Virus record (IMG/VR): IMGVR_UViG_3300048008_000449
Span: 124,001 to 188,000 of that record
DNA: 64,000 bases
Reading direction: 5' to 3' (one strand)
Under the pieces are notes generated by a model. It did not search any database. It had not been told where the DNA came from and saw nothing but the letters and a program-made list of their open reading frames with translations. A program made the translations under genes and the position numbers. Shown piece after piece: positions 14,333 to 52,109 of the stretch. The first letter of the stretch is position 1; the number at the start of each line of letters is the position of its first letter.

Positions 14333-15022
14333 TTATGACAGGTTATAGAATTTCTCTAAACGTTGGGCCCATTTCATTTCCCAATTTTTAAAGTCTTCTG
14401 GACCACTTTCGAACAGTTGCCATTGACAATCACCACTACACATAAAGATAGCAATACGATCAATTGTAGTATTGTACATTTCGTTATGTGCGTTTGCATA
14501 GGCGGCACCTTGTAAGAAATAATCTTCAATCCATTCACGTTTTTTAGGCTTATTAGTCTGCTTAAAGTCCATAATAGTTGGATGTCCTTTATAAACACCA
14601 ACTAAGTCAGTTGTGCCAGCATATAATCCAGCCGCACATAAATTAACTTCAGTTCCCCATATCTCACTAACATCATCTTCAATATTATCCACAACAACCT
14701 GTGCCATTGCCTTAGCTTGTTTGTGTACTATATTATTTCCAGGGTTGTATGTTTCATACTCGCCTAATGCCCAATGTTCTAATATATTGTGCATAACTGT
14801 ACCTCTATTGGCAGCAGTTGTTGTAATGCGTTGTGCTTCTTCTGTACCTACTCTTTTTCTCCATGCCGCCAATCCTGCACGTTTTTCTGCAGGCTGTGTA
14901 GCACTTAAAATAGTGGTAACACTTGGAACAGGATCGCCCCAAGGATTCTCATATAGACGTTTTCCGTCTACACTAGTTCGTTTTAATTCTTTATATGGAT
15001 ATGGACTTTTAATCTTTAACAT
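14333..15022 (-). CDS. PD-(D/E)XK exonuclease
   Basis: PSVTTIL, RGT.MH, YAGTTDLVG, IMDFKQT, YFLQ..AYA. Confidence 0.9.
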   Translation of the reverse strand: MLKIKSPYPYKELKRTSVDGKRLYENPWGDPVPSVTTILSATQPAEKRAGLAAWRKRVGTEEAQRITTTAANRGTVMHNILEHWALGEYETYNPGNNIVHKQAKAMAQVVVDNIEDDVSEIWGTEVNLCAAGLYAGTTDLVGVYKGHPTIMDFKQTNKPKKREWIEDYFLQGAAYANAHNEMYNTTIDRIAIFMCSGDCQWQLFESGPEDFKNWEMKWAQRLEKFYNLS

Positions 15023-15028
15023 GCATTA

Positions 15029-15057
15029 AGTATACTACTGTTGTGATAAGATGTCAA
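15029..15057 (-). promoter_or_regulatory. sigma70 promoter, probably leaderless exonuclease mRNA
   Basis: TTGACA-N17-TATACT-N6-ATG. Confidence 0.8.
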
Positions 15058-15796
15058 TGGTTTCTTCAGTTAAAATAAAATTATTTAACACCCATGTATT
15101 ACTAAACAACGACCAGTGGTTATCATCCGGTGCTACTGTTAATCCATTTCTAAATGCTATTTCCATATGGACTTTTGTATCTTTTGTAAATACCCACTCG
15201 CCTTCATCTATAAATTGTTTATATAATTCAACTTCTGCTGTACGTAATTGTGGCTTATCTACCATACGTAATAATTCTAACTTAATAATATGTTCAAAGT
15301 TATATAATGTATCCATGTTATCGTACCATTTATCGTTCCATGAATGATATACATCTGATACACTTTTACGTGCTAATGATTCAGTAATGTTTGATTGTAC
15401 ATTTTTTGGAAAATTATCATTTGGGGAATTTCTAAACATACCTGCATTTCTATGTATTGAATACCATATATGAGGTGGGCCATCTAACGTAGAGTAATTA
15501 TTATCAATTTTTTGTTCTTCAAATTCAAAGTCTCCAGTACTACCAACTTCAAATACTCTTTGCTTGAATGTTCTATTAGTAAAGATAATATCAATGCCAC
15601 GTAGCTTTGCATCAAGTAAACACCATTCATAGTAGTCGTGTCCACGACCTCCTATTGCGTAATTATAATATTGATGTTGTGGGAATTTTTGTGCTAGTTG
15701 ATAAGTCCAACTATTCTTTTCTACTTTGTCTTGCCAATATGCTGAAAAACTATCGCCTATAAAAGCAATCTTTTTGCCTACCAATAAATGTACCAT
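15035..15796 (-). CDS. SGNH/GDSL hydrolase-like protein
   Basis: FIGDSFS, NYAIGGRG, DDNHW. Confidence 0.7.
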   Translation of the reverse strand: MVHLLVGKKIAFIGDSFSAYWQDKVEKNSWTYQLAQKFPQHQYYNYAIGGRGHDYYEWCLLDAKLRGIDIIFTNRTFKQRVFEVGSTGDFEFEEQKIDNNYSTLDGPPHIWYSIHRNAGMFRNSPNDNFPKNVQSNITESLARKSVSDVYHSWNDKWYDNMDTLYNFEHIIKLELLRMVDKPQLRTAEVELYKQFIDEGEWVFTKDTKVHMEIAFRNGLTVAPDDNHWSLFSNTWVLNNFILTEETIDILSQQ

Positions 15797-16386
15797 TTTA
15801 ATGTCTTACTGGTATTTGCATTTGTGAGTCTTTCAATTTTATATCCTAAATTTTGAAAATGTTTAATTACTGTTTCCATTTGACTTTGTAATCCACGATC
15901 TGTAAGTGTACCTTGCCATACATTAAAATAGTTGACACTAGTTGGGTTTGTAATACTATACGTTCCTGGTGCAAATCCTAAATTTGCTGTTCCTGCACCA
16001 ATATCATAATTCCATGATGCAAATGAACCTTCAATTGTTAGTACTAAGTATCCTGCGTCTTTGCTTGCTGTTAATCCTGCTAATCCTGCATCGTTAATAT
16101 CTGCAACAATAGAATTAAGATTTGTTCCACTTGTTCCAAGTGTTATTGTTTGATTATTAAAAATAAGTGTGTCACCTACAGTTATTGTGGGGTTATTAAC
16201 TGTACCAATTTTTTGTATGCTAGGAGTTGAGTTTGTCATTGTAGTTGTGTCTGATACAGTACCTTCAAATTTACCTAATGCACTCTGTGAAATAACAACT
16301 TCCATGATAGCTTGTGTTTCTTTGTACACAATCATATCTTGTGATGCTTTAGCTCTTGCTTGGGCTGCGTTTAATCCTACACTCAT
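15778..16386 (-). CDS. putative structural protein
   Basis: Thr/Gly-rich insert (ITLGTSGTNLNSIVADIN.AGLAGLTAS) resembling flagellin-type insertion domains; in a late operon. Confidence 0.55.
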   Translation of the reverse strand: MSVGLNAAQARAKASQDMIVYKETQAIMEVVISQSALGKFEGTVSDTTTMTNSTPSIQKIGTVNNPTITVGDTLIFNNQTITLGTSGTNLNSIVADINDAGLAGLTASKDAGYLVLTIEGSFASWNYDIGAGTANLGFAPGTYSITNPTSVNYFNVWQGTLTDRGLQSQMETVIKHFQNLGYKIERLTNANTSKTLKWYIYW

Positions 16387-16709: not shown

Positions 16710-16713
16710 AGCT

Positions 16714-17478: not shown

Positions 17479-17522
17479 GTTCAATACCCCACTAGGTTTT
17501 TTATATTATATTGTATTTATGC

Positions 17523-19142: not shown

Positions 19143-19145
19143 TTA

Positions 19146-19960: not shown

Positions 19961-19962
19961 TA

Positions 19963-22387: not shown

Positions 22388-23791
22388 CTAACTATTACTT
22401 CTTTTGAGCATACTGCGAAGTTTATCATGCCCTGTTATAGTGTTTTCAACAACACTATTCTCAGCAATGTTCTTTTCTTGGTGTGTTGTTTTGTTTTGTG
22501 CCTTAATTTTCTCAAACATAGCACTAGGTTGATTCATTGTAGATCCTGCTTCATCGTCATCTAAGTCCTCAATACGTAAGCCTGATATATCAAATTTTAA
22601 GTCTACTTTTTGTCCAACACCGCTACTACTACGTGTTTTCATAAACTGAATTTGATAACGCCCACGTTCACGCATAGCTTGGCTTGTAAAAATACCAATT
22701 ACGTTATCCGCTGTTTGAATCTTACTTAAACCACCAGCAATATGAGAATGATCAAATTCTACTTCTTCTACAGCCGCTCTGTTTAGCTGTGATGCTGTAG
22801 CAAATAGTAAATCATGTTCTACTGCAAAGTTACGCAATTCTTCAGATACAAACTTATCTTTAATAAACAAATCACTAGGATTAACTTTGCTCTGTGCTGG
22901 CATCATTAAGTCTAAGTAATCTATACAAATTGCATCAATTTTAATATCGTTCTTAACTTCATATTCACGTAAGTAACTAGTAATAGCATTGATTGTAATA
23001 CCATTTGGTAATTGTACAATTTGTAATTTACCTGCATTTTTACCTTGCATACGTACTTTTAAATCTACGTCATCTGCATTTTTAAATACGTCACGTGTAT
23101 TCATTCCTGTTAACATACTATCTAATCGCATACTACATAGTTCTTCACTAAGTTCTAAACTAATGTATACAACATTCAAGCCTGCTAGTGCCCAATTTAA
23201 TCCTAAGTTTTGTAAGAACAAACTCTTACCACCACCTGATGGTGCAGCAAATATATTCAATTCACCTCTATTAAATCCACCATATAGTTTCTTATCAATT
23301 TCTGCCCAACCTGTACTTGTACCGCCACGCTGATTACGTACTCTTTCAATACGTTCTGCAGGAGATTCCCAATAGTCTGTTCCCATATGTTTAGCAAGTC
23401 CAATTTGTACTGCTTCTTTTACCATACGTTCTACTGGTCCATAATCACCCTTTTCCAATAAATCTGCACTTTTTAAAATTGCCGCTTCTAATGCTTTATG
23501 TTTACAAAATACTTCAAACTCATCAATAAACCATTTCTTATGTCTATCATCTACGTCTTTTAATTCTTGTAATTCTAATCCTGTTGTTGCTACAATTTGT
23601 TCTAATGTAGGTAATGCACTATATCCAGTTGCATGTTCTTTTATAAACTCTACACCTTTACGTAATTCTCTATCAAAGTATTCAGGATCTAATATGCCGT
23701 TTACCCTAGCAAATAAGTCTTTATCTTGTGCTAAAAATTCTACAAACAATCGTTGTAGATCTATATTATATTCTTTTGCTTGTTCTGTCAT
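22388..23791 (-). CDS. replicative DnaB-like helicase (T4 gp41-like)
   Basis: APSGGGKS Walker A, ISLEL, IDYLDLM, TASQLNR, KTR; ATGA-coupled to primase. Confidence 0.93.
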   Translation of the reverse strand: MTEQAKEYNIDLQRLFVEFLAQDKDLFARVNGILDPEYFDRELRKGVEFIKEHATGYSALPTLEQIVATTGLELQELKDVDDRHKKWFIDEFEVFCKHKALEAAILKSADLLEKGDYGPVERMVKEAVQIGLAKHMGTDYWESPAERIERVRNQRGGTSTGWAEIDKKLYGGFNRGELNIFAAPSGGGKSLFLQNLGLNWALAGLNVVYISLELSEELCSMRLDSMLTGMNTRDVFKNADDVDLKVRMQGKNAGKLQIVQLPNGITINAITSYLREYEVKNDIKIDAICIDYLDLMMPAQSKVNPSDLFIKDKFVSEELRNFAVEHDLLFATASQLNRAAVEEVEFDHSHIAGGLSKIQTADNVIGIFTSQAMRERGRYQIQFMKTRSSSGVGQKVDLKFDISGLRIEDLDDDEAGSTMNQPSAMFEKIKAQNKTTHQEKNIAENSVVENTITGHDKLRSMLKRSNS

Positions 23792-24801
23792 TTGCAATAC
23801 TTTCTCATTAATAGTTCAATTTTAGTTGAATTCTTTTCAGCACTATCTATTATACTTGTTATTGTATACAATCTTCCGTATTTTGTCAAGGCATCACTTG
23901 CATCTTTACAATCTTTCCACTCGGGAAATGCTACCATCCAACCATTTTTTATAGCTGATTTACACATTAATTTACCAGCTTCATCTGCGTCTGGTAATAC
24001 TATAATTTGTTTTTCTAAGCTATGTAATATGTCTGCTTGTTCGTCATTTATATTATTACTACCAATTGCACAACCATCTGTAACAATAGCATCAAGTTGG
24101 CCTTCAGTTACAATAACAAACTGTTTATCACTGGTTTGTTTATCTAACCCATATACAAAGTCTTTTTTAGGTTGCTGATTATAGTATTTAGGCATTCCGT
24201 CAGGAATATTGTTTCCTGCCCATCTTGCTGTATAACCAACTACTTTACCTTTATATGTAAATGGTAATATAAATCTTTTATTTACTCTTCCATGCTGTTT
24301 ACTAGGACTCCACATAAATCTAGAATCTGTTACATCGAATCCTCGATCTGTTAAGTATGCTACTGCTTCTGTCCAATCTGCATTTGGCTCTGTAAATTCC
24401 ATAAAAGGTTTTGCATCATCAGGAAGTTTTTTCTCATCCCAATCAATAACTAAATTTTTACGTTTTTCAGTTTTTATTAATAATGTTTCTACGTCTTGTT
24501 CACGTAATAGTTCTAACTGTATACGTTGTATATCACTCTCATCAGCACCAAGTGTAACTAACAAGTTTTTTAACCTTACTGTAATTTTACTTTGTGGACT
24601 CCAACCTGTTTTATAGTTGCAATTAAAACAATTATACTGAAATTTATCATCATCAAATAAGAACCCACCTCTGCCTTTCTTATCTGGTCTTGCTTGTCCA
24701 TTACGTACACACATAGGACAGTTACCGCTAATCCAACCACTAGGGCTAGACCGCCAATTAACCGGAACCAGAGTTCTCACGTATTCATTCATTAAAGCCA
24801 T
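23788..24801 (-). CDS. DNA primase (T4 gp61-like)
   Basis: Zn finger CPMC...CFNC; TOPRIM motifs VTEGQLDA, PDAD, KDASDA. Confidence 0.93.
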   Translation of the reverse strand: MALMNEYVRTLVPVNWRSSPSGWISGNCPMCVRNGQARPDKKGRGGFLFDDDKFQYNCFNCNYKTGWSPQSKITVRLKNLLVTLGADESDIQRIQLELLREQDVETLLIKTEKRKNLVIDWDEKKLPDDAKPFMEFTEPNADWTEAVAYLTDRGFDVTDSRFMWSPSKQHGRVNKRFILPFTYKGKVVGYTARWAGNNIPDGMPKYYNQQPKKDFVYGLDKQTSDKQFVIVTEGQLDAIVTDGCAIGSNNINDEQADILHSLEKQIIVLPDADEAGKLMCKSAIKNGWMVAFPEWKDCKDASDALTKYGRLYTITSIIDSAEKNSTKIELLMRKYCK

Positions 24802-24807
24802 GTGTAT

Positions 24808-24836
24808 ATATTACACTCTAACTATAACTTTGTCAA
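24808..24836 (-). promoter_or_regulatory. sigma70 promoter, probably leaderless primase mRNA
   Basis: TTGACA-N17-TAATAT-N6-ATG. Confidence 0.7.
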
Positions 24837-25644
24837 GTGTTCCTGTAGGTTGAGTGTGTTTTGTTCTAATATATTTGACATTTGTACGGAATGTCCATGG
24901 ATCTATGCCAGTGTGCCCGTTATATGGGTAGAATGGTTGTGTATATGTACCTAATGTAATATCAAACCAATCATCTTCTGTTGGGTTATCGCTTAATGCA
25001 CCCTGTACCCAAAAGTTACCAGTATATCCTGTTCCGTAAACAGCAATAGTAATAAGACCGTTTGGCTTATTATAATAACCAGTTGCACGTAATGCACTAC
25101 TAAAGTAATATGTGTCTGTGTTGATTATTTGTGTAGTAAATGAATCATTAATTTGTGTAGTAAGTGGTAATGCATCGCCTTCTTCTGAACACTCAACTGT
25201 ATAATTAGGTCTCATATTCAAATCACAATACATAGGAACTACTAAGCCCTTGTCAGTTGTGTAACTAAAAACTAAGTCATATAACCCTTGTGAAAATAAA
25301 CTACTTTCACCACTAGTTATTACTACTTTCACAGATCCTGCATCATAATCAGTTATTATTGCTTTTTTACTTATTACTGTTGATCTATCGCCTCTGTCAA
25401 TTAATGATACTTGCATTGTTGTACCATGAAGCATAATAGGTTTTCTATCTTGATTTTTTACAAAGAAGAAAAACTCAGTATCAAACCCACGAAATAGTTT
25501 TAAAAATCTATAATTAACTGGACTATTAACGGCAGTACCTTTAGCACTTGCATATTTTCCTAATCCTGGTGCTGAACCATGATCCTCTAATGCGTATAAT
25601 TCGCCTGTTTGGTTTATATTATATGTTGTTCCGTAATTTGACAT
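24811..25644 (-). CDS. putative structural protein (beta-rich)
   Basis: 277-aa ORF; GGAG RBS; ATAAATA at 25664. Confidence 0.65.
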   Translation of the reverse strand: MSNYGTTYNINQTGELYALEDHGSAPGLGKYASAKGTAVNSPVNYRFLKLFRGFDTEFFFFVKNQDRKPIMLHGTTMQVSLIDRGDRSTVISKKAIITDYDAGSVKVVITSGESSLFSQGLYDLVFSYTTDKGLVVPMYCDLNMRPNYTVECSEEGDALPLTTQINDSFTTQIINTDTYYFSSALRATGYYNKPNGLITIAVYGTGYTGNFWVQGALSDNPTEDDWFDITLGTYTQPFYPYNGHTGIDPWTFRTNVKYIRTKHTQPTGTLDKVIVRV

Positions 25645-25707
25645 GTGTTAGACTCCTGTATTGTATTTATCAAATACTACCAGATTTTGAAAGCATAAAT
25701 AGATGTA

Positions 25708-26079
25708 ATGCAAACGAAACATCAGAAACTCTTGGACGAATATCCGTTCCTTACTGTAGTAGAGTATGCTAGCAATGAGTATCTTGGTATAATTCAAAAC
25801 ATAGATAACCATGTTGCTAGTATGTATGTCTACGATCGATTAAACGAAACCTCAGAAAAAGCAAAGTTCTTAGCACTTGGCGAAGAATGGTGGTGGGAAA
25901 CTAATAGAAAGTTACCTATTAATATTGCATTACTTAATAGATGGAATTTCCAATATTGTGTACAAAGTTTTAATGTTAAACAAATGGACGTAATTGCAGG
26001 GCCTGAAGTAAGATTAAGTAATAGCATTACTAAACGTATCAAACGCAGAAGTATTAATCTTGTAAAGAAAAACCAGTAG
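25708..26079 (+). CDS. hypothetical protein (isolated plus-strand gene)
   Basis: 123 aa, LGEEWWWETNRKLPINI; own ATAAATA at 25695. Confidence 0.75.
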   Translation: MQTKHQKLLDEYPFLTVVEYASNEYLGIIQNIDNHVASMYVYDRLNETSEKAKFLALGEEWWWETNRKLPINIALLNRWNFQYCVQSFNVKQMDVIAGPEVRLSNSITKRIKRRSINLVKKNQ

Positions 26080-26638
26080 CAAGCATATTTAATTGTAATA
26101 CAATAGCCATTGCATATGCATGGGCATGTGCTTTCTTAAAATAGTAGTCGCCATTTGTAGGCTTTATCCATACTTCATTATTAATGGTATTCCAATCTTT
26201 ACCAATTAAATATCTTTTGGCTGGTCTAATTACTGCTAATACTGCGGCCATTTGTTCTACACTCTTAGGTTTCATCTGCCCAACAACACCAAAGTGTTTA
26301 TGAATATGAAAACATTGTTCTACAACTTCTTTGTGTTCTAACAATTCCCACATTGGTTCCATTGCTAGTAAATCATCTAATTGTTTCTTAGATTCAATCT
26401 TTTTATATAAGCCAACGTTAAGTATATCAATTTTAAAATATCCCATACTTTCAGCTTCTTTGTGATCAATTGTAGACATACCTGTAAATGGATTGCTAGG
26501 AATGTCATGGAAGTATATACCAGTATTGTGCTTAACTTGCTTGTTATCACGTGCAATCATTGCTGGTATTCCATTAATAATATTAAGTAGCTTATCTCTA
26601 TTTGCTACATCAATATCAATATCTGTGTTTACTATCAT
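26054..26638 (-). CDS. miniature DNA polymerase III alpha (DnaE)-like catalytic core
   Basis: DIDID, HNTGIY, GYFKIDIL, KP..VEQMAAVLAVIRP, YFKKAHAHAY in DnaE order. Confidence 0.8.
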   Translation of the reverse strand: MIVNTDIDIDVANRDKLLNIINGIPAMIARDNKQVKHNTGIYFHDIPSNPFTGMSTIDHKEAESMGYFKIDILNVGLYKKIESKKQLDDLLAMEPMWELLEHKEVVEQCFHIHKHFGVVGQMKPKSVEQMAAVLAVIRPAKRYLIGKDWNTINNEVWIKPTNGDYYFKKAHAHAYAMAIVLQLNMLATGFSLQD

Positions 26639-26721
26639 TTTGGATCCTCGTTGTTCATTTTATACAATAAAAAAATTGGTATTATAAAACAACATAATAC
26701 AAAAAGCAAAGACCATATCAT
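26635..26721 (-). CDS. 28-aa membrane micropeptide (absent from ORF track)
   Basis: MIWSLLFVLCCFIIPIFLLYKMNNEDPK; ATGA overlaps with both neighbours. Confidence 0.6.
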   Translation of the reverse strand: MIWSLLFVLCCFIIPIFLLYKMNNEDPK

Positions 26722-27389
26722 ATAGTTGCTTGCTCCATTATTTCTTTTACCCATTTAGTATCTTGTGGGTTTACTTTCATTGCACGTTCCCAATAATCTA
26801 TTTCTAAATAATCAGTAACCATTTTAATTTGTTCAGGATTAAATCTATCAATTAATCCTTGCGCCGCATTACTATTAAATAGTACCCATGGCGAAATCTT
26901 TCCACTACAAATATGAAATACTGCTAAATTAGGTGATACTATTTCAAAATAATTATTATATGTTGTATTGTTTTCTTTTGCCCAGTTTTGTAAAAATAGT
27001 ATTGTACGTTCTACTGCCCTATCTACTGTCTCAGTTCTTAAACGTTCTTTCATCCATGATGTAAACTGTTTATCTTTACACCAATGGTCAAGTCTTACTT
27101 GGTTTCTTACTAACCAAGTTGCGTAAGCCGGAACATCATCGATACCAATGTCGCGACAATAATAACCAAACTTACAGAAGCCAATATAGTATTGACTCTT
27201 TGCAAAATCTTCGTAGCTTTTTTCATTCTTTGAATTTGTTCCTATTTTATAAAATAATTGAAATGCTCTAAAACCAAGTTGAACATGTTGTTCTCCTTTT
27301 TGCATAAATCTACGTTTCTGTTCACACATATGAACAGCTAGTGTACTTTCTTTTTTAAATGTTTTAGAACAGTATCCGCATTTATACAT
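26718..27389 (-). CDS. zinc-finger protein
   Basis: N-terminal YKCGYCSKTF......HMC C2H2/C2HC-type finger. Confidence 0.75.
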   Translation of the reverse strand: MYKCGYCSKTFKKESTLAVHMCEQKRRFMQKGEQHVQLGFRAFQLFYKIGTNSKNEKSYEDFAKSQYYIGFCKFGYYCRDIGIDDVPAYATWLVRNQVRLDHWCKDKQFTSWMKERLRTETVDRAVERTILFLQNWAKENNTTYNNYFEIVSPNLAVFHICSGKISPWVLFNSNAAQGLIDRFNPEQIKMVTDYLEIDYWERAMKVNPQDTKWVKEIMEQATI

Positions 27390-28050
27390 TAACAGTTTCC
27401 TTTTTCCAGAAAGGATCAGTCCAATTCTCTTTTAAGTTTTCTGGTCTACTAACTTTCATAGTATATAACGAGTTATTAATCAAGTCAACATATTTTTCTG
27501 TTGGTTGTCCAGTCCATGGAGCACCTATACATAATGTGACTTTTTCTTCTGTACCTGGCTCAAGTGCATGTGGATGACTACCATCCAATACATATGTAGT
27601 ATAATTTTGTGGAATATAAACTTTATTATCTTTCTTATCTATAAAATACAATTTATCAACATTACCGTTTAACACGATTCTAAATTTATGTTGCAGTGAT
27701 CCTATTTCATCAACCTTACTATCTAAATGTACATTTAATCCATAGTTTGCTGGCGTTCTTAAAATAGTAACTCTGCCAACTGGTTCCATCCATGGAAATA
27801 CTTTTTCTTTTAAAAGTTTTTGTGTAAATGTCCAATTCTGTGCAGGTTTGGTATATGCAAACTCTCCATATCTTGTATTTTTGCCTTCTGCTTGTCCGCC
27901 AAGTTGACCTTCTGCATTAAATACAGGTAGCATCTTGCATCCACGAAATTCGTTATAATGCCAGTAACTATCATCAACTGACATTACTTCATTATACATA
28001 GCTTTTCTATCTTCATCTGTTATATTTAGATCTAAAGCCGTAAACGTCAT
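27382..28050 (-). CDS. 2OG-Fe(II) oxygenase (Asp/Asn beta-hydroxylase-like)
   Basis: GRVTIL...LNVHLD...SHPHAL...KVTLCI. Confidence 0.7.
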   Translation of the reverse strand: MTFTALDLNITDEDRKAMYNEVMSVDDSYWHYNEFRGCKMLPVFNAEGQLGGQAEGKNTRYGEFAYTKPAQNWTFTQKLLKEKVFPWMEPVGRVTILRTPANYGLNVHLDSKVDEIGSLQHKFRIVLNGNVDKLYFIDKKDNKVYIPQNYTTYVLDGSHPHALEPGTEEKVTLCIGAPWTGQPTEKYVDLINNSLYTMKVSRPENLKENWTDPFWKKETVNV

Positions 28051-28505
28051 TTTAATAATTCTTTTATTTGTTTTTTATCTAGCCCGTACTCTTCAAAAAG
28101 ATCTTTCCAATCATCTTTTGTTTTAGTACTAATAAATATCTCTACTTCATCATCATTTAAATGACTATAATTTTCAACTACCCACTTTTGAATCTTATTC
28201 TTTTTCATTGCCTTACCTGGTGGTAGCCATGGATGAAATGTAGTCTTACCTAATCCAACTAATTGCATCAGTTGATACTGCAATTGTGGATGTTTACGTA
28301 ATTTGTTAAAGTGTACATTAACTACTTCATTAGTCCATTCTAAATAATGTTCAGTAAACATCTTGTCTCCACAACTACTAGTATAACGCATAAGTAGCCA
28401 TAAGCCAAGTTTGTTTTTCTCTTCATCAGTTAAACTATCATACCAAGTTCTATCTTTAGTATCAATAGATCTCATCTCTTCTTTGATGTTTAGTTTATTT
28501 GACAA
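28047..28505 (-). CDS. possible clamp-loader small subunit (T4 gp62-like)
   Basis: LLMRYTS..N.VN...LQYQL...KTTFHPWL pattern; replication context. Confidence 0.5.
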   Translation of the reverse strand: MSNKLNIKEEMRSIDTKDRTWYDSLTDEEKNKLGLWLLMRYTSSCGDKMFTEHYLEWTNEVVNVHFNKLRKHPQLQYQLMQLVGLGKTTFHPWLPPGKAMKKNKIQKWVVENYSHLNDDEVEIFISTKTKDDWKDLFEEYGLDKKQIKELLK

Positions 28506-28716
28506 TTATTACTTCCCCTTCAGTTTCTATCCAAACTTTTGCACCACACGGTAATGGTTTATCTGGACTATAAACAACTTTACTATCACCTTTAATATGT
28601 ACTTCATGTGCATAGTCATTGCTCTTAGATGTTTTACATGTTAACACAGGCTCTCTATCACCAGACTTAGCGTTACGTTTAATTATATGCTGATTAACGT
28701 GTATTCTAGTTTTCAT
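28495..28716 (-). CDS. small hypothetical protein
   Basis: Start set to MKTRIHVNQH; YSPDKPLPCGAKVWIET. Confidence 0.75.
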   Translation of the reverse strand: MKTRIHVNQHIIKRNAKSGDREPVLTCKTSKSNDYAHEVHIKGDSKVVYSPDKPLPCGAKVWIETEGEVIIVK

Positions 28717-28720
28717 TGTA

Positions 28721-29221
28721 CTACCAAAGCTCGCTAATGTCAAGTACCTCAGGTAACTTGTTTGATTCTTTTACAAATAATACACAAGGTGCATTTGGTC
28801 CATCATGTAGTGGTACATTTAGTAAATGGCCGAATTTAAGTTTAGGTGCATACCATTTAACATCAGTATAAATGTTAGTAATGCTTACATCCAAGTACTT
28901 AGGTGTAAAACCAGTTACTGGATTAAATGCAAATACACTAAAACCTCTATCATTTAAACTCATTAAACTTAATACTTCTGGATCTCCTACTGTAGGATCG
29001 CAAATTACAACACTCCAATCTAATGGCATAGTAATTTGATATTCACCAATTTTTAATACTGCCGCTGGTGCATAAAAACTTTCCAAGAACACTAATGGGA
29101 TGAAGTAGTAATCAATAAAACCTGGATTACTGTAATCTAAAATACTGTATCTTAAATCATCTATAGTATCTGGTATGTCATCTAGTTCATACGTTTCGTT
29201 TTCAACTGTTAATATTTTCAT
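28721..29221 (-). CDS. hypothetical protein
   Basis: 166-aa beta-rich ORF directly after uvsW; AAGGA RBS. Confidence 0.75.
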   Translation of the reverse strand: MKILTVENETYELDDIPDTIDDLRYSILDYSNPGFIDYYFIPLVFLESFYAPAAVLKIGEYQITMPLDWSVVICDPTVGDPEVLSLMSLNDRGFSVFAFNPVTGFTPKYLDVSITNIYTDVKWYAPKLKFGHLLNVPLHDGPNAPCVLFVKESNKLPEVLDISELW

Positions 29222-29230
29222 TATTTTTCC

Positions 29231-30682
29231 TTATTGCCAATCAACTTTTTCAATGCTGAATGGATAGTTTGCTTCTTTATAAAACTTCTTACGCTCTGTT
29301 AAGTGTTTTTTGCTAAATTTTGCTGTACTGGTGATGTCCCATATTTGAACATTATCTTTATCTTCTGCTTTACGTATTCCACGACCAATACTTTGAATGA
29401 CTCTAACAAAACTCTTTCCAGGTTCTATTAGTACCAGATTAAAAATACGTGGAATGTTAATTCCTACTGCCGCAACTCCATAAGTTGCTACTACAATTTG
29501 ATTAGTTCCTTCATTAATATTATCATACTGATCTTTACGATCTGTAGTTTTCATTTCTCCACTAACAAAGTTAGCTTGTGGAAGATTATCACAAATTAAT
29601 CCACCTGCTTTAATCCTATCTACTAATACAAGTGTATTGCCTGATGCTGATACTTTTTCAATTAATCCACTTACATATTGCATACGATCTTTATCTGTAG
29701 TAAGATAAGTTAATTCGCTTTGATAATTATTATACTCTGCAAATTCTTTCATTTGCACAACGTTAACATGACATTGACTAAGCACATCCATGCCTTGTAG
29801 TTCGCTTGCACTAAGTTTATTAGTTACATCACCTAAGCATGCTTGCAAACTAACTTTCTCATGATCTGCTTTAGGTATAGTACCTGTTAATCCCCAACGT
29901 AGTGGAATGTTTGCAAATTCTTTAGTAAGTAATTCTTTTAACACATCTGCTTTTGCTTGGTGCACCTCATCTACTATTACACATACAACGTCTTCAGCAA
30001 AGTCTGCTAAACTTAGGTCTGATTCACCTTCTCTAAATCTTTTCTTAATACTATTCAAACTTTGCCATGTACAAATAGTATGAGTTTTTCCTAATTCTTT
30101 TTTATCGCCAAAGTAAACACCAACGTCTAATCCTAGATTGTTATAATCATCAAATGTTTGACGTACTAAATCTTTGTTTGGTACAATAACAATTGATCTT
30201 CCATATGTTTCCACACGTTCGCTAAGTGCCGCGGTTATTAATGTTTTACCTGCACCTGTTGCAATTTCTTGTAAACAATGTGGAGTCTCTAAAAACTTAT
30301 TAACAATCTCAATCTGATAATCACGCAATGTTACTGGCTCACCTGCAACCGGATGTTTTTCTGGCCATAATTTATGTTGAAATGTAGTTTTATCAACTGT
30401 TGGAAAATTAAAATCAAACTTATTTCTTAAGTCATCAATATCAATTTCATATCCATTATCCATAATAGTAGGAAGTACTCTATCAAGTAAATTAATATAA
30501 GTAACACCACCTACTGTAAAGTAACTTTGACATCCATCCCATCTACCTAATTTATATGCTGGCACATGGTATGCATATGGTAAAAAGAACTTTAATTCTT
30601 TCTCACATTTACGGCGGGTATTAACATCAAGACCTTCTATCTTGCAGTTAACTTCATCTTTTAAAACAATTTTACATTTCAT
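29231..30682 (-). CDS. uvsW: SF2 DNA helicase UvsW-like
   Basis: LRDYQ, ATGAGKT, DEVH, GLTGT, QSIGRG; start reassigned to MKCKIV. Confidence 0.92.
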   Translation of the reverse strand: MKCKIVLKDEVNCKIEGLDVNTRRKCEKELKFFLPYAYHVPAYKLGRWDGCQSYFTVGGVTYINLLDRVLPTIMDNGYEIDIDDLRNKFDFNFPTVDKTTFQHKLWPEKHPVAGEPVTLRDYQIEIVNKFLETPHCLQEIATGAGKTLITAALSERVETYGRSIVIVPNKDLVRQTFDDYNNLGLDVGVYFGDKKELGKTHTICTWQSLNSIKKRFREGESDLSLADFAEDVVCVIVDEVHQAKADVLKELLTKEFANIPLRWGLTGTIPKADHEKVSLQACLGDVTNKLSASELQGMDVLSQCHVNVVQMKEFAEYNNYQSELTYLTTDKDRMQYVSGLIEKVSASGNTLVLVDRIKAGGLICDNLPQANFVSGEMKTTDRKDQYDNINEGTNQIVVATYGVAAVGINIPRIFNLVLIEPGKSFVRVIQSIGRGIRKAEDKDNVQIWDITSTAKFSKKHLTERKKFYKEANYPFSIEKVDWQ

Positions 30683-30688
30683 ACTAGT

Positions 30689-30717
30689 ATAATACATTAA
30701 CTTAGACAAAAAGTCAA
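30689..30717 (-). promoter_or_regulatory. sigma70 promoter, probably leaderless uvsW mRNA
   Basis: TTGACT-N17-TATTAT-N6-ATG. Confidence 0.7.
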
Positions 30718-30727
30718 GTTAAAGCCT

Positions 30728-31060
30728 TTATAATGTTAAATATTTTAAGAGTAAAAATAGACATATCATAGTTACTATAATAGAAACTATCAATGATAAC
30801 CAGAATCCTTGATGCATAATCAAATACGCAAACACAGGAAAGAATATTAAACTTACTAAAACAAAATAAACAGTTTCTTTTGCTAACTGTGAAAATACCT
30901 CAGGCTGAATTCCGCTATAATGCATAAAGAATATGCTTACAATACTGCTTAGTGGTATTCCTAATATAAGAGCACCAATAGTCGGGTTGCCTCGTTCTGC
31001 GGCAGTTACAACACCTGCTATTACTAGTCCACCTATAACTGCTTTAAGTAAGAATTCCAT
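30728..31060 (-). CDS. 4-TM membrane protein (DUF3147-like)
   Basis: KAVIGGLVIA.V...A.R..P..GALI.GIPL.S. Confidence 0.7.
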   Translation of the reverse strand: MEFLLKAVIGGLVIAGVVTAAERGNPTIGALILGIPLSSIVSIFFMHYSGIQPEVFSQLAKETVYFVLVSLIFFPVFAYLIMHQGFWLSLIVSIIVTMICLFLLLKYLTL

Positions 31061-31078
31061 AATATTATTTATGTCATA

Positions 31079-37636: not shown

Positions 37637-39193
37637 TTATAGTAAGCTAAAAGGCATGGGTTCCATACCGTCATCATCGTCAAAATCTTCGTTTAAGTAC
37701 TCAAATGCACTTTCTTCATATTTTGATACTTCCATACTCATTCTTACTATTAAAACTAGTGCCATTACAAGGTCATCGTTTTCACCATCTTTGGCTGCAT
37801 AACTATTGCCTCTAGCGATAAATGTTTTTAATTCTCTTAATAGCGGTTTACTTGCTATTTCTAATTTTTCTGTTTCTACCCAATGCTTTAATTTACTACA
37901 TGCTGATATTTTACTTTTGTGTGTAGTAGTAAATCCTCGTCTATAACGTTTAGCATTACCATGTGATTTTGTTTCACTTAAAAATGTACCTGGAAAGTTT
38001 TCTTCTCCAGTTTCTTCAACAACTACTAATGCTGCTTCTCCTAGTGTATTGTTTTCCATACTGTAATATATTTCACAATCACCGTTTGTTTCACTTTCAA
38101 TATATTGTGATATTTCTCTTAATATTTTTACTTGACCTTGAACCGTAGTTCTGTTATGCATCCACTCTGCAACTTGTTTCATTCCTGGCATACTGTATAC
38201 TTGAATAGCACTATTGTCGCCGCCGGTACCTAAACTAGGATCTAATGCTATTATATATAGTTTTCCTTTTGCTACCGGTGCATACCAACGTACTTGTCCT
38301 GCTTTAGCATAAGGATCACGTGCTTCCATATTACTAAGTCTAATACTATCAATAAGTGTTTCATCAAACGCAATAAATTCACAGTTATGTTCACGTCTAA
38401 ATCTTTCTTCACCAATTTTACCTTGTTCAATTTCTGCCCATTCCCAATCTCTATCTGGATGTACTTCCCATGAAGCTAGATAATGTGCAAATCCGTTAAT
38501 ACCTTGTTTTGTTTCATTTCCATGTTCATCTTGATTTTTATTAGCATCTCTCCAAATTTGTGCAAATTGATCATCATCCATGTTTGGTGTTGAAGTAATA
38601 ATACATTTACCACCTGTTGCTAGTGTAGGTGAAAGTGAAGTCCAAAATTCTTTAGCAATATTTGGTCTAACAAATGCAAACTCGTCTAAGTATGCTAACG
38701 ATATAGATAAACCACGTCCAGTATTTTCTGTTGTTGACTGTGCTACAATACGTGAGCCGTTATCAAATTCCAACGATCCTTTGTTATATGCAGTAACACC
38801 AGCTCTAATAAAATCAGGCAGTGTTTCGTATGCAAAACGTATACGTTGCATAATTTCACTTGCACCTGAATATTTGTGTGCCGCGATAAGAATAGTTTGA
38901 TCTGGATTAAACATTGCATACCATAGCAAGTATCCTGCCGCACAGGTACTTTTACCTGTTTGTCGTGCAAGCATACTAATACTATATCTATTATTATGAT
39001 ATGTATCTACTAGTTCTTCTTGGAAATCATATAGTGCAAACTTCATACGACCTTTAGTAGGATGCTGAATATAACAGTGTTCCTTCATAAAGTGTTTAGG
39101 ATCTTGAGTACATAGAGCAAGTTCTTGAATTTGCTCTTCTGTGTAACGTTCTTTTCTATAAGGGGTTTTGGTTAATTTTGTATCTACTGCCAT
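37637..39193 (-). CDS. terL: terminase large subunit (T4 gp17-like)
   Basis: LYDFQ, ARQTGKS, LDEFAF, ITSTPN, ALDPSLG, DDLVMAL. Confidence 0.96.
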   Translation of the reverse strand: MAVDTKLTKTPYRKERYTEEQIQELALCTQDPKHFMKEHCYIQHPTKGRMKFALYDFQEELVDTYHNNRYSISMLARQTGKSTCAAGYLLWYAMFNPDQTILIAAHKYSGASEIMQRIRFAYETLPDFIRAGVTAYNKGSLEFDNGSRIVAQSTTENTGRGLSISLAYLDEFAFVRPNIAKEFWTSLSPTLATGGKCIITSTPNMDDDQFAQIWRDANKNQDEHGNETKQGINGFAHYLASWEVHPDRDWEWAEIEQGKIGEERFRREHNCEFIAFDETLIDSIRLSNMEARDPYAKAGQVRWYAPVAKGKLYIIALDPSLGTGGDNSAIQVYSMPGMKQVAEWMHNRTTVQGQVKILREISQYIESETNGDCEIYYSMENNTLGEAALVVVEETGEENFPGTFLSETKSHGNAKRYRRGFTTTHKSKISACSKLKHWVETEKLEIASKPLLRELKTFIARGNSYAAKDGENDDLVMALVLIVRMSMEVSKYEESAFEYLNEDFDDDDGMEPMPFSLL

Positions 39194-39224
39194 AATATTA
39201 TTTATCTACGTAGTTAACAAAGAA

Positions 39225-39251
39225 AAACAGCGTAGACTAGCTACGCTGTTT
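39225..39251 (-). terminator. intrinsic terminator
   Basis: AAACAGCGTAG-actag-CTACGCTGTTT with T tract on the minus strand. Confidence 0.85.
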
Positions 39252-49954: not shown

Positions 49955-51413
49955 TTTTATTCCACTTTAATAACTTCTGTAAGTAATTATCAGGAATTTC
50001 TGTAAATTTATCCATTTCTTGTTTATCAATCCATACTAGATTTGGATGTGTAAGAGTTCCACGTGATGATAACACTAAAACGTTATTCTGATATGAGCTA
50101 TCTTTAATCTTGCCCATTAATTCATTATGTAATTCCCATCGTTGCTGTAAACTATAATAAAACGAAGTAGGTAAGTAATGAAATATGTTACTTAGATAAC
50201 AAAATGTTATTGGATGACGTAATCTATCTGTTTTAAAAGAATTAACAAATCCTTGATATGTATTTGGATCAAAAATGTTAATTGGCAAATAAACTACTTC
50301 AATCTCTGGTAATACTTCAGTTATCCATTTTTGAAATCCACGTTCATTTAATTTATCAAATACTTCTTGTGTATGTGGTAACTTATTTTTTCCTCTAAAT
50401 ATATCTCTTTGGTATTTTTCATCTGGTGCTAATTTATTCATTAAGTCAGTAGCAAATTTTTCGTAATTAGTACCGTCCCATTGTTCAATAATTGTTTTTG
50501 TAATATTAATAGCAAATTTACTAATATCGTAAACAAGTATCTTACTGTATTTGTCACATCCTAGTTCAAATGCATATATTAATGGTGTTAATCCTGCGGC
50601 CGGTACAACTAGTGTATCCCATTTTTCGTCCCATTCTGGATATTGTAATTTTCTTCTTTCAACTTCAAGATGAATATCTCTCAATGGCTCAGTATTAGCA
50701 ATAAAGAATATGTCTAAATCAATCTGTTCCATAACACCTGATAAATGTCTTGGTCCATCTTCTTTTACTTCTGGATAAGAATAATGTTTCTCATCTCTAA
50801 TATTTTTATTCCACGATAGAATTCGTTGTTGGTCATCTAATAAAGACTTTACTAAATTCCAACCTGTATGTTTTGCATTATATGTTTTAGTATTTTTACC
50901 TGGTCCAATCCAATGAGGGGTATAATCATCATGCCAATTTGATATACTTCTAGCAGGTTCAATTGTTTCTAATGATTTAGCTTCTGGTGAACCCCAAGCT
51001 GGCTTGCCTGCTTTTACCCACCATTCAACATCAAGCATAAATGCTTGTGGATGTAAAGAATAATATTCATCGCCTTTATCAACTATATGTCCAATAAATG
51101 TTGCATCTTTATTTTCTTCATAAAATTTTACAAACTGTTCTTTAAAATTAGATAAAGGAGTTGTTCCTTGTTTGAACACTAATATCTTTTTATATTTCTT
51201 CTCAACTGCATCTTCTAACAAACCTTCTATAGTATCATTGGCCATTTGTTCGTGGAAATAGAATCCCAATTCCATTGACCAATAATCTGTTAAGTTTTTA
51301 GTGTATCCTCGAGCGAAGTCATCTTTAATGCTATTGTTATATAGCCAGCCAAACCCTAATTCTTTTGATTTACTTTTATGTTGCCACCATTGATGCCCAA
51401 ACATGTTTAACAT
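49947..51413 (-). CDS. two-domain hypothetical protein, paralog of 48503..49954
   Basis: LVVPAAG, VYDIS, YLSNIFHY; GHIVDKGDEYYSLHPQ; YTP.WIGPG; FFIANTE. Confidence 0.65.
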   Translation of the reverse strand: MLNMFGHQWWQHKSKSKELGFGWLYNNSIKDDFARGYTKNLTDYWSMELGFYFHEQMANDTIEGLLEDAVEKKYKKILVFKQGTTPLSNFKEQFVKFYEENKDATFIGHIVDKGDEYYSLHPQAFMLDVEWWVKAGKPAWGSPEAKSLETIEPARSISNWHDDYTPHWIGPGKNTKTYNAKHTGWNLVKSLLDDQQRILSWNKNIRDEKHYSYPEVKEDGPRHLSGVMEQIDLDIFFIANTEPLRDIHLEVERRKLQYPEWDEKWDTLVVPAAGLTPLIYAFELGCDKYSKILVYDISKFAINITKTIIEQWDGTNYEKFATDLMNKLAPDEKYQRDIFRGKNKLPHTQEVFDKLNERGFQKWITEVLPEIEVVYLPINIFDPNTYQGFVNSFKTDRLRHPITFCYLSNIFHYLPTSFYYSLQQRWELHNELMGKIKDSSYQNNVLVLSSRGTLTHPNLVWIDKQEMDKFTEIPDNYLQKLLKWNKNV

Positions 51414-51441
51414 ATATATTTCCTTTATAGTATATGTTTAT

Positions 51442-52074
51442 TTATTCTATAATTTTTTGCAGAGTTTGAGACTTAAAATTTTCTAATGTAGATGTGTTAG
51501 TTAAGTTAATATCAAAATTCCAACCTGCCCAACTCCATTCGCTTTTATGTACATCAGGAAAAACAACAGACATACTGTTATGTTCAACATTATTTGCACC
51601 TGCTTGATTAATACTAGAAGCAGTAGCCCACCATAATGGTTTCTCATTTCTCCAAACAACTGCTGTTGTTCCACCTAATTTTTTAATTGCTTTAAGTTCA
51701 TTAAAAAATCTACAGTCACTAATAACAACATTTTTTGTACACATCTCAATTTGACGTTCACATGCCGCAACCCAGATATCTGGATGGAAATGTGTTCTCA
51801 AAACATCAGTGCCTACGTGTTGTAATGCAAATCTTGGAGTAAAATTAGGAATATCTAAACGCTCAGCCCACCACTCATCAACAGTTTCTCTCCATACTCT
51901 ACTTTCTGATGTATTTCCTTCTAGTAGGATTCTGTCCCAACCAAATATATTTGCACATGCATCTTTTAATACTCCTGCAAAACTAATACGTTGAAAGCCT
52001 TCTTCGATGAGAAAACCTGCGGCGGTGTCTTTTCCGTGACCAATAAGGCCACATATACCAATTACTTTTTTCAT
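51442..52074 (-). CDS. deoxynucleoside monophosphate kinase (T4 gp1-like)
   Basis: GICGLIGHGKDT, SFA..LK, TPR..LQ.VGT, VISDCRF.NE, H.SE. Confidence 0.92.
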   Translation of the reverse strand: MKKVIGICGLIGHGKDTAAGFLIEEGFQRISFAGVLKDACANIFGWDRILLEGNTSESRVWRETVDEWWAERLDIPNFTPRFALQHVGTDVLRTHFHPDIWVAACERQIEMCTKNVVISDCRFFNELKAIKKLGGTTAVVWRNEKPLWWATASSINQAGANNVEHNSMSVVFPDVHKSEWSWAGWNFDINLTNTSTLENFKSQTLQKIIE

Positions 52075-52080
52075 AAATTT

Positions 52081-52109
52081 ATTATAGTGGGTTTTTAATT
52101 ATTTGTCAA
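52081..52109 (-). promoter_or_regulatory. consensus sigma70 promoter, probably leaderless dNMP kinase mRNA
   Basis: TTGACA-N17-TATAAT-N6-ATG. Confidence 0.85.

What the first reader, a model, noticed from the sequence alone, without database searches (positions are those of the whole stretch)
15022..52109. Systematic leaderless sigma70 transcripts for DNA-metabolism genes
Seen: four genes have TTGAC(A/T)-N17-TAnnnT followed by exactly 6 nt and then ATG, with no room for a Shine-Dalgarno. They are the exonuclease (15022), primase (24801), uvsW (30682) and dNMP kinase (52074). Established: sigma70 transcription starts about 7 nt after the -10 box, i.e. on the A of ATG. Inference: a leaderless class of replication mRNAs. 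This could keep them translated when SD-led translation is impaired, and hints at a host rich in leaderless mRNAs.
Basis: partly seen in the sequence, partly recalled or inferred. Interest (0 to 1): 0.6.

Follow-up and report, generated by a model that had tools for sequence, protein, structure and literature searches.

The report
Leaderless genes in marine jumbo phage
In this uncultured marine jumbo phage and its many relatives, a set of genes sits so close behind its promoter that the mRNA should begin at the start codon itself, a known but uncommon way to express genes, here conserved across a whole phage clade and not limited to replication genes.

Summary
Four minus-strand genes (exonuclease, primase, UvsW-like helicase, dNMP kinase) carry TTGAC(A/T)-N17-TAnnnT-N6-ATG, against 0.04 matches expected by chance.

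- **In the 204.8-kb contig:** spacing 6 is the only spacing that lands on real ORFs (6 of 6). Promoter-to-start distances fall into two groups: 6 nt with no Shine-Dalgarno (SD), or 25-37 nt with an SD.
- **In IMG/VR relatives:** 109 distinct upstream sequences keep the geometry while the spacer and N6 letters vary. All 109 start with ATG and none has an SD. Of the 105 at exactly 6 nt, 103 have a pyrimidine at -1, the usual start-site signature. Orthologues that lost the geometry gained an SD, sometimes with TTG or GTG starts.
T4-late-like ATAAATA boxes lie exactly 5 nt before ATG at 10 genes, including the large terminase (TerL). The class is therefore not specific to sigma70 or to DNA metabolism.
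- **Host claim:** the closest cultured relative, Pseudomonas phage PA5oct, keeps the layout at primase and exonuclease. Its host is not rich in leaderless mRNAs, so that inference is not supported.

No 5' ends could be mapped, because the metatranscriptome data were short contigs only. Verdict: very probably real leaderless transcripts, a new member of a known kind, of moderate interest.

The parts
15020..15057 (-). Exonuclease leaderless promoter. -35 TTGACA at 15057-15052, 17-nt spacer (its last 3 nt are the stop codon of the upstream ORF), -10 TATACT at 15034-15029, N6 at 15028-15023, ATG at 15022-15020.
   Evidence: Conserved in 42 of 43 distinct orthologue upstream sequences.
14333..15022 (-). 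Exonuclease gene, 229 aa.
   Evidence: phrog_298, E 3e-57, aligned from residue 8. The next in-frame starts are at codons 50 and 76.
24799..24836 (-). Primase leaderless promoter. -35 TTGACA at 24836-24831, -10 TAATAT at 24813-24808 (its TAA is the stop codon of the upstream virion-protein gene), N6 at 24807-24802, ATG at 24801-24799.
   Evidence: Conserved in 30 of 31 distinct orthologue upstream sequences, down to 48-50% protein identity. PA5oct gp261 has the same geometry with a GTG start.
23788..24801 (-). DNA primase gene, 337 aa, followed by a DnaB-like helicase gene (22388-23791).
   Evidence: phrog_47 and Toprim_2. DnaB-like helicase is phrog_19.
30680..30717 (-). UvsW-like helicase leaderless promoter. 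-35 TTGACT at 30717-30712, -10 TATTAT at 30694-30689, N6 at 30688-30683, ATG at 30682-30680.
   Evidence: Kept in 14 of 34 distinct orthologue upstream sequences. Two orthologues switched to a promoter plus a 23-26-nt leader carrying AAAGGA. The upstream in-frame TTG and ATG lie inside the promoter and are not conserved; 10 of the 14 have an in-frame stop within 45 nt upstream.
29231..30682 (-). SF2 helicase of UvsW type, 483 aa.
   Evidence: phrog_16; phrog_16259 aligned from residue 1; ResIII plus Helicase_C.
52072..52109 (-). dNMP kinase leaderless promoter. -35 TTGACA at 52109-52104, -10 TATAAT at 52086-52081, N6 at 52080-52075, ATG at 52074-52072.
   Evidence: Kept in 23 of 43 distinct orthologue upstream sequences. 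A further 13 have an SD instead, 7 of them with the promoter moved to 23-24 nt upstream and 4 with a TTG start.
51442..52074 (-). dNMP kinase gene, 210 aa.
   Evidence: phrog_139 aligned from residue 1; PF21448. There is an in-frame TAA three codons upstream and no other start codon in the first 80 codons.
39193..39251 (-). Start region of the large terminase (TerL). Terminator hairpin at 39251-39225, late-type box ATAAATA at 39205-39199, N5, then ATG at 39193. No SD.
   Evidence: Among TerL orthologues, 22 distinct sequences have TAA[A/G]TA-N5-ATG without an SD, and 16 are SD-led (3 with GTG).
37637..39193 (-). Large terminase gene, 518 aa.
   Evidence: phrog_36964, E 6e-133; Terminase_6N and Terminase_6C.
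30728..31072 (-). 110-aa ORF with the late-type box ATAAATA at 31072-31066, N5, then ATG at 31060. A hairpin followed by a T-run lies directly upstream.
   Evidence: The box and hairpin are conserved in 10 distinct relatives, with N5 or N4 letters that vary.
53514..54245 (-). 239-aa ORF with ATAAATA at 54245-54239, N5, then ATG at 54233. No SD (+3.0 kcal/mol).
4519..4773 (-). 80-aa ORF with ATAAATA at 4773-4767, N5, then ATG at 4761, directly after tRNA-Glu.
25695..26079 (+). Plus-strand 123-aa ORF (phrog_11637) with ATAAATA at 25695-25701, N6, then ATG at 25708. No SD.

Best explanation
These are promoters placed so that host RNA polymerase starts transcription on the A of the ATG, giving leaderless mRNAs that ribosomes translate from a 5'-terminal AUG without a Shine-Dalgarno.

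Two promoter types use the layout:
- **Sigma70-type:** TTGACA-N17-TAnnnT, then 6 nt. This serves the exonuclease, primase, UvsW-like helicase and dNMP kinase, plus two further genes outside the window.
- **T4-late-like:** an ATAAATA box, then 5 nt. This serves the large terminase and about nine other genes.

**Shown:** the geometry, its statistics, the absence of an SD, its conservation, and repeated switching between this form and an SD-led form in relatives.

**Inferred:** the actual 5' ends and the mode of translation.

**Inferred consequence:** these genes lie on the same strand as genes of another temporal class (replication genes between virion genes). An SD-less AUG is poorly used when it sits inside a read-through transcript. 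The layout would therefore tie translation of each gene to firing of its own promoter.
For: **1. Chance is excluded.** There are 4 hits against 0.04 expected in the window. In five other long relatives there are 17 hits against 0 for the reversed-pattern control, and 21 against 2 for the late-type pattern.

**2. Only one spacing lands on genes.**
- k=6: 6 of 6 hits lie on ORFs of at least 168 aa.
- Late-type k=5: 10 of 10 hits lie on ORFs of at least 68 aa.
- Other short spacings almost never lie on an ORF.

**3. The distance from box to called start falls into two groups, with a gap between.**

| Promoter type | Close group | SD in close group | Far group | Duplex energy in far group |
|---|---|---|---|---|
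| sigma70-type | 6 nt | none (-3.4 or weaker) | 25-37 nt | -4.0 to -8.4 kcal/mol |
| late-type | 5 nt | none (+0.3 or weaker) | 18-31 nt | -4.8 to -8.0 kcal/mol |

**4. Comparative evidence from IMG/VR orthologues.**
- Of the distinct upstream sequences, 109 keep the sigma70 geometry.
- Each gene shows 11-24 different N6 strings and 12-36 different spacers.
- None of the 109 has an SD, and all 109 start with ATG.
- Orthologues without the geometry have an SD (14 strong), and 4 of those use TTG.
- For the terminase, 22 are leaderless (all ATG) and 16 are SD-led (3 GTG).

**5. The base at -1 is a pyrimidine.** This holds in 103 of 105 leaderless-type sequences, against 19 of 42 non-leaderless orthologues (Fisher p = 2e-13) and 65 of 143 SD-led genes of this genome. 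A pyrimidine at -1 with a purine at +1 is the known preference of bacterial transcription start sites (general knowledge).

**6. The starts cannot be elsewhere.** In-frame stops lie just upstream. No SD-led start lies downstream. Family profiles align from residues 1-8.

**7. The 5' ends look open.** The first 40 nt of the 16 candidates are less structured than those of SD-led genes (median -1.6 against -2.7 kcal/mol, p = 0.0065).

**8. The layout persists in PA5oct** at primase (N6 then GTG), exonuclease (N7 then ATG) and the structural gene gp262 (ATAAATA-N5-ATG).
Against: - No transcript 5' end was observed. The only RNA data were Logan contigs of 151-417 nt from marine metatranscriptomes, and none lies at the predicted starts.
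- The host and its RNA polymerase are unknown.
- The ATAAATA box is called a late promoter by analogy with T4 and by its position before virion genes. No gp55-like factor was found in this contig, which CheckV rates as 56% complete.
- The orthologue sequences are related to each other, so the counts overstate the number of independent events.
- The 5' end of the dNMP kinase mRNA is predicted to be structured (-9.5 kcal/mol).
- In PA5oct the primase would start with GUG, which is a poor leaderless start in E. coli (general knowledge).
Confidence: 0.8

Rival explanations
1. The promoters are real, but transcription starts 1-5 nt before the ATG, giving very short leaders rather than strictly leaderless mRNAs.
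For: - Start-site choice by bacterial RNA polymerase varies by 1-2 nt (general knowledge).
- A few relatives have N7 or N4 instead of N6 or N5, and the PA5oct exonuclease has N7.
- One uvsW clade at 58% identity has a -10-like box 11-12 nt upstream of the ATG with no SD.
Against: - The spacing is exactly 6 in 105 of 109 sequences, and the pyrimidine at -1 with A at +1 points to the A itself.
- Such mRNAs would in any case use SD-independent initiation near the 5' end, so the biology is nearly the same.
Confidence: 0.1
2. The genes are translated mainly from long read-through transcripts by SD-independent means (A/U-rich sites bound by protein S1, or termination-reinitiation after the upstream gene). 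On this view the promoter geometry is incidental or serves only transcription.
For: - The upstream same-strand genes end only 9-45 nt before these ATGs.
- The intergenic letters are A/T-rich.
Against: This does not explain any of the following:
- why the -10 box is fixed at exactly 6 nt while its surrounding letters vary;
- why distances of 8-24 nt are absent;
- why the start is always ATG;
- why -1 is a pyrimidine;
- why loss of the geometry comes with gain of an SD.

The terminase and the 110-aa ORF also have terminator hairpins directly upstream, which argues against read-through there.
Confidence: 0.05
3. The sites are chance promoter-like matches, or the start codons are mis-called and the true SD-led starts lie downstream.
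For: In A/T-rich DNA, loose promoter-like matches are as common as in shuffled sequence: 95 found against 86 expected with the loose consensus.
Against: - The strict pattern gives 4 hits against 0.04 expected, and 17 against 0 in relatives.
- No SD-led start lies downstream. For the dNMP kinase no alternative start codon exists.
- Protein conservation, with synonymous changes, begins at these ATGs.
Confidence: 0.02

Closest known systems
Leaderless cI mRNA of phage lambda, transcribed from promoter PRM
   Same: A sigma70 promoter is placed so that transcription starts on the A of the AUG. There is no Shine-Dalgarno, and translation begins at a 5'-terminal AUG (general knowledge; Shean and Gottesman 1992, as listed in PMC12340547).
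   Different: Lambda has a single regulatory gene of this type. Here there are at least 16 genes per 205 kb, spread over two promoter types, including replication enzymes and the terminase, and conserved across a large clade.
Thermus phage phiYS40, whose middle and late transcripts are leaderless
   Same: A large lytic phage in which whole temporal classes of transcripts lack leaders (as summarised in PMC3594737).
   Different: - In phiYS40 most middle and late transcripts are leaderless, the host phylum (Deinococcus-Thermus) uses that mode widely (PMC12340547), and host IF2 and IF3 levels are reported to shift.
- Here only a minority of promoters are of this type: 4-6 of about 30 sigma70-type, and about 10 of about 30 late-type.
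- Most genes here have strong SDs, and nothing is known about initiation factors.
-10 box adjacent to the ORF in Deinococcus-Thermus, and leaderless genes of mycobacteria
   Same: A TAnnnT box lies 6-7 nt before the start codon with no SD (PMC12340547, PMC4633059).
   Different: - Those promoters usually lack a strong -35 box, GTG starts are common, and the mode is a genome-wide host habit.
- Here the -35 box is a perfect TTGAC(A/T), the start is always ATG, and the rest of the genome is SD-led.
T4 late promoters (TATAAATA box, gp55-dependent)
   Same: The same core box stands before virion genes, with the start expected 6 nt after the box (general knowledge). ATAAATA precedes the sheath, adaptor and virion-protein genes here.
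   Different: - T4 itself has only 2 ATAAATA-N5-ATG matches in 169 kb and no sigma70-type match.
- The first T of the box is often C, G or A here.
- No gp55 homologue was found in this partial contig.
Pseudomonas phage PA5oct (Arenbergviridae)
   Same: It is the closest cultured relative: terminase 55.6% and tail sheath 38% identical. It shares the synteny of replication genes set between virion genes, and the leaderless-type geometry at primase, exonuclease and gp262.
   Different: - Its published analysis reports 32 TTGAC/TATAATA promoters but no leaderless transcripts (PMC7318152).
- Its primase uses GTG and its exonuclease N7.

Membership tests
Bacterial leaderless mRNA | The primary 5' end coincides with the first base of the start codon (5'UTR of 0 to a few nt). 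| tested here: inconclusive
   Metatranscriptome contigs laid on 24742-30741 were short and did not reach the predicted starts. The feature is inferred only from promoter geometry and the pyrimidine at -1.
Bacterial leaderless mRNA | No Shine-Dalgarno before the start codon. | tested here: met
   Anti-SD duplex energies run from 0.0 to +3.0 kcal/mol, with -3.4 for primase, against -4 to -8.4 for leadered genes. None of the 109 orthologue sequences has an SD.
Bacterial leaderless mRNA | AUG start codon (5'-terminal AUG recognition). | tested here: met
   All 131 leaderless-type orthologue sequences start with ATG (109 sigma70-type and 22 late-type). Of 30 SD-led ones, 7 use TTG or GTG. Exception: the PA5oct primase has GTG.
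Bacterial leaderless mRNA | Translation initiation on 70S ribosomes, dependent on IF2 and antagonised by IF3. | not testable with these tools
   Needs biochemistry.
Sigma70-type promoter | -35 TTGACA and -10 TATAAT hexamers with a 17±1 bp spacer. | tested here: met
   The -35 is 6/6 or 5/6 with a 17-bp spacer at all four sites. The same architecture precedes about 25 SD-led genes of the genome.
Sigma70-type promoter | Promoter activity with host RNA polymerase. | not testable with these tools
   The host is unknown. No 5' ends were seen in the RNA data.
T4-type late promoter | TATAAATA-like box about 6 nt before the start site, located before late (virion) genes. | tested here: met
   ATAAATA precedes the terminase, sheath, head-tail adaptor and virion-protein genes.
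T4-type late promoter | A phage gp55-like late sigma factor. | tested here: inconclusive
   T4 gp55 and its weak PA5oct match found nothing in this contig, which is only about 56% complete.
phiYS40-like leaderless programme | Most middle and late transcripts are leaderless. | tested here: not met
   Only about 16 candidate genes among about 279 are of this type, and most promoters carry 18-37-nt leaders with an SD.

The most novel reading that the evidence does not exclude
A large clade of abundant marine jumbo phages, reaching as far as PA5oct, uses leaderless starts from two promoter classes as a way to gate translation by promoter.

- Early and late genes are interleaved on one strand.
- An SD-less AUG is read only when it is the 5' end of the transcript.
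- Each such gene would therefore be translated only when its own promoter fires, and would stay silent on read-through transcripts of the other temporal class.
- Lineages switch repeatedly between this form and an SD-led form.
- The ribosomal protein bS21 encoded by the phage might tune the balance between the two initiation modes.
Probability: 0.3. Interest if true: 0.7.

Novelty: new member of a known kind. Interest (0 to 1): 0.55.

Why it matters
- **Annotation.** Gene callers that rely on an SD or on the longest ORF mis-place these starts. The PA5oct primase and terminase appear to be annotated from upstream codons that lie inside the -10 box or inside a terminator.
- **A predictive rule.** A box at 6 nt (or 5 nt) with no SD and an ATG start could be used to annotate uncultured phage genomes.
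- **Biology.** A widespread group of marine phages, together with a phage-therapy candidate, would express core replication and packaging enzymes by SD-independent initiation. If translation is tied to one promoter, that would explain how early and late genes can share a strand without cross-talk.
- **Testability.** PA5oct is culturable, so the prediction can be tested directly.

Tried and rejected
- **RNA evidence.** The run search found only marine metatranscriptomes holding 5-13% of the sampled words, all kept as Logan contigs. I laid 4 runs on 24742-30741, which is 6,000 letters. This gave 26 short pieces and none at the predicted starts. It shows that identical sequence occurs in RNA libraries, but nothing about 5' ends.
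- **DNA similarity.** Megablast against named phages found nothing.
- **Late sigma factor.** T4 gp55 and its weak PA5oct match found nothing in the contig. The contig is partial, so this is uninformative.
- **Host identification through the phage bS21.** Homologues are unnamed metagenome proteins. The host remains unknown.
- **Strict pattern in PA5oct.** It gave 2 hits, neither at an annotated start. The orthologues nevertheless turned out to have the geometry, with GTG or N7, once I looked at them directly.
- **Papers not available.** The PA5oct supplementary promoter table is not held, and the phiYS40 paper is not held.
- **Literature searches.** Searches for leaderless transcripts in T4-like, jumbo or marine phages found no report for this clade.
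- **Downstream SD-led starts.** Rejected.

Full report
**What the window is**

The window lies in a single 204,772-bp virus record from IMG/VR. It has 34% G+C, is linear, and CheckV rates it about 56% complete. The phage is uncultured and marine. Seawater metatranscriptomes hold identical pieces of it, and IMG/VR holds hundreds of related contigs.

It belongs to the T4 superfamily. The closest cultured relative is Pseudomonas jumbo phage PA5oct, with the large terminase (TerL) 55.6% and the tail sheath 38% identical. Nearly all genes in the window are on the minus strand. Replication genes are interleaved on that strand with virion genes. These include a virion protein just before the primase, a head-tail adaptor two genes before the dNMP kinase, and the terminase and sheath nearby.

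**The observation**

All four sites are real, on the minus strand, and exactly as described.
- TTGACW-N17-TANNNT-N6-ATG has 4 matches in the window against 0.04 expected.
- The four ORFs are an exonuclease, a Toprim primase, an SF2 helicase of UvsW type and a dNMP kinase.
- None has a Shine-Dalgarno (SD), and none has a usable start elsewhere. The kinase ORF is closed by a TAA three codons upstream and has no other start codon in 80 codons. The exonuclease's next candidates are at codons 50 and 76. Family profiles align from residues 1-8.
- The promoters are packed into the ends of the upstream genes. At the primase, the TAA stop of the upstream gene is the first half of the -10 box.

**Is it more than chance, and is the spacing special?**

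Across the whole contig, the sigma70-type pattern with k nucleotides before the ATG gives 6 hits at k=6, all on ORFs of 168-483 aa. For k = 0-5 and 7-10 together it gives 10 hits, of which only one lies on an ORF of at least 60 aa. The two extra hits are a DNA-polymerase-III-alpha-like piece of 168 aa and an unknown 170-aa ORF.

I then took every strict promoter that has a called gene start downstream. The distance from the -10 box to the start falls into two groups:
- 6 nt, with anti-SD duplex energy of -3.4 kcal/mol or weaker;
- 25-37 nt, with energies of -4.0 to -8.4 kcal/mol.

Nothing lies between. This is what one expects if a gene must either start at the 5' end of its mRNA or have a leader long enough to hold an SD.

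**A second promoter class shows the same layout**

Among the SD-less genes, many have a T4-late-like box, (C/G/A)ATAAATA, just before the ATG.
- Of the 82 ATAAATA boxes in the contig, 10 have ATG exactly 5 nt downstream, and all 10 open ORFs of 68-1,085 aa.
- These include the large terminase (window ATG at 39193), a ligase-like protein, a radical-SAM protein, a P-loop kinase-like protein, and window ORFs starting at 31060, 54233 and 4761.
- In T4 the box occupies -13 to -6 (general knowledge), so N5 puts the A of the ATG at +1.
- The distances again fall into two groups: 5 nt with no SD (duplex energy +0.3 or weaker), against 18-31 nt with an SD (-4.8 to -8.0).
- The leadered ATAAATA boxes precede the sheath, adaptor and virion-protein genes, which supports reading the box as the late promoter.
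- The terminase and the 110-aa ORF have terminator hairpins directly upstream of the box.

**Comparative test**

I fetched up to 80 related loci for each of five genes from IMG/VR and compared the distinct upstream sequences.

| Gene | Distinct upstream sequences | With leaderless geometry | Notes |
|---|---|---|---|
| Primase | 31 | 30 | down to 48-50% protein identity |
| Exonuclease | 43 | 42 | |
| dNMP kinase | 43 | 23 | 13 others SD-led |
| UvsW-like helicase | 34 | 14 | 2 switched to a weak-SD (AAAGGA) leader; 1 other has a strong SD |
| Large terminase | 45 | 22 (TAA[A/G]TA-N5-ATG) | 16 SD-led, 3 of them GTG |

- The spacer and N6 letters differ widely, with 11-24 different N6 strings per gene. 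Selection therefore acts on the geometry rather than on the sequence.
- None of the 109 sigma70-type sequences has an SD, and all start with ATG.
- Where the geometry is lost, an SD appears. Some dNMP kinase orthologues keep the promoter but move it to 23-24 nt upstream with a GGAG in the new leader, and four of these use TTG. Others have only a GAGG or AGGA motif.
- In the orthologue sets the promoter-to-start distances are 4, 6-7, 20-26 and 39 nt, with none from 8 to 19.
- Five other long relatives give 17 sigma70-type hits against 0 for the reversed control, and 21 late-type hits against 2.
- T4 gives 0 and 2.

**A start-site signature**

If the A of the ATG is +1, the base before it should be a pyrimidine, which is the known preference of bacterial RNA polymerase (general knowledge).
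- It is T or C in 103 of the 105 sequences whose -10 box lies at exactly 6 nt.
- It is T or C in only 19 of 42 orthologues without the geometry (Fisher p = 2e-13).
- It is T or C in 65 of 143 SD-led genes of this genome.

The first 40 nt of the 16 candidate mRNAs are also less structured than those of SD-led genes (p = 0.0065). The dNMP kinase is an exception.

**What could not be shown**

No 5' ends were seen. The RNA runs are kept only as short contigs, and none covers the predicted starts. No gp55-like factor was found in this partial contig. The host is unknown.

The phage does encode a ribosomal protein bS21. However, its nearest match among species genomes is only 43% identical.

**Mechanism**

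The best-supported reading has three steps:
1. The host polymerase starts on the A of the ATG, either with its primary sigma factor or with a late factor.
2. The mRNA is leaderless.
3. It is translated from its 5'-terminal AUG.

Steps 1 and 3 are inferred. The geometry, the absence of an SD, the ATG rule, the -1 pyrimidine and the switch-like evolution are shown.

A further inference follows from the gene order. Each leaderless gene follows a same-strand gene of another class, and an SD-less AUG inside a read-through transcript should be poorly used. The layout would therefore tie translation to the gene's own promoter. This is untested.

It is not supported.
- Most genes here are SD-led.
- PA5oct, whose host is P. 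aeruginosa, has TTGACA-N17-TATAAT followed by N6-GTG at its primase and N7-ATG at its exonuclease, and ATAAATA-N5-ATG at gp262.
- In P. aeruginosa only 55 proteins were predicted to come from leaderless mRNAs, among 2,187 primary and secondary start sites (PMC8244752).

**Comparison with what is known**

Leaderless phage mRNAs are established. Examples are lambda cI and the phiYS40 middle and late classes (PMC3594737). The arrangement of a -10 box adjacent to the ORF is common in Deinococcus-Thermus and in mycobacteria (PMC12340547, PMC4633059).

My literature searches found no report of it for T4-superfamily, jumbo or marine phages. The PA5oct transcriptome paper lists promoters but no leaderless transcripts.

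I therefore file this as a new member of a known kind. It has two notable traits: it uses two promoter classes, and it is conserved across a clade with repeated switching to SD-led forms.

Noticed in passing
window 33254-33226, 32043-32015, 56128-56100; also genome positions 122924, 121979, 121732, 119935 and 49088 (minus strand): A second, highly uniform promoter class. It has TTGACA, a spacer holding a near-perfect palindrome (AGTAAGAyGTCTTACT), TATACT, then a conserved leader starting GTAAGTATAGTTAAT and a strong GGAG. It mostly stands before small ORFs. The palindrome between the hexamers looks like an operator for a dimeric regulator.
   Followed up: no
G000:C1:112132-112380, minus strand (outside the window): The phage encodes a ribosomal protein bS21: PF01165 at 50.8 bits, above the curated cut-off. 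Its relatives are unnamed metagenome proteins, some on contigs over 300 kb. The best match among species genomes is only 43% identical (Aureimonas). It may bear on the choice of translation initiation mode.
   Followed up: partly
L401 (PA5oct NC_071039 128573-130732), positions 260-305: The annotated terminase start of PA5oct lies inside a terminator hairpin. The ATG homologous to this phage's terminase start lies 27 nt downstream, right after the T-run, with no SD. In the same way, the PA5oct primase is annotated from a GTG that abuts the -10 box.
   Followed up: partly
L132-L160 (uvsW relatives at 57-59% identity): A separate clade has a TATAGT or TATAAT box 11-12 nt before the ATG, with no SD and no clear -35 box. 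This could be a very short leader or another promoter type.
   Followed up: no
window 4779-7311 and 4973-4945: There are five tRNA genes (Glu, Asp, Ala, Leu, Thr). A perfect TTGACA-N17-TATAAT promoter ends 12 nt before tRNA-Asp, and a late-type leaderless ORF starts directly after tRNA-Glu.
   Followed up: no
window 28743-28495 and 30709: Two ORF-finder starts (TTG) are simply the TTG of a TTGACA -35 box. Longest-ORF calling over-extends genes at these promoters.
   Followed up: partly
window 25450-25651, 27844-28029, 28218-28721, 30034-30456: Contigs from two marine metatranscriptome runs match these stretches without a single difference. This phage, or a near-identical strain, is therefore present in RNA libraries from seawater. 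DNA carry-over cannot be excluded.
   Followed up: partly
orthologue sets L001-L400: The same gene switches between the leaderless and SD-led forms in different lineages. For example, the virion-protein gene before the primase is SD-led here (ATAAATA-N19) but leaderless-type in PA5oct (ATAAATA-N5). This is a natural series for studying how the two initiation modes interconvert.
   Followed up: partly
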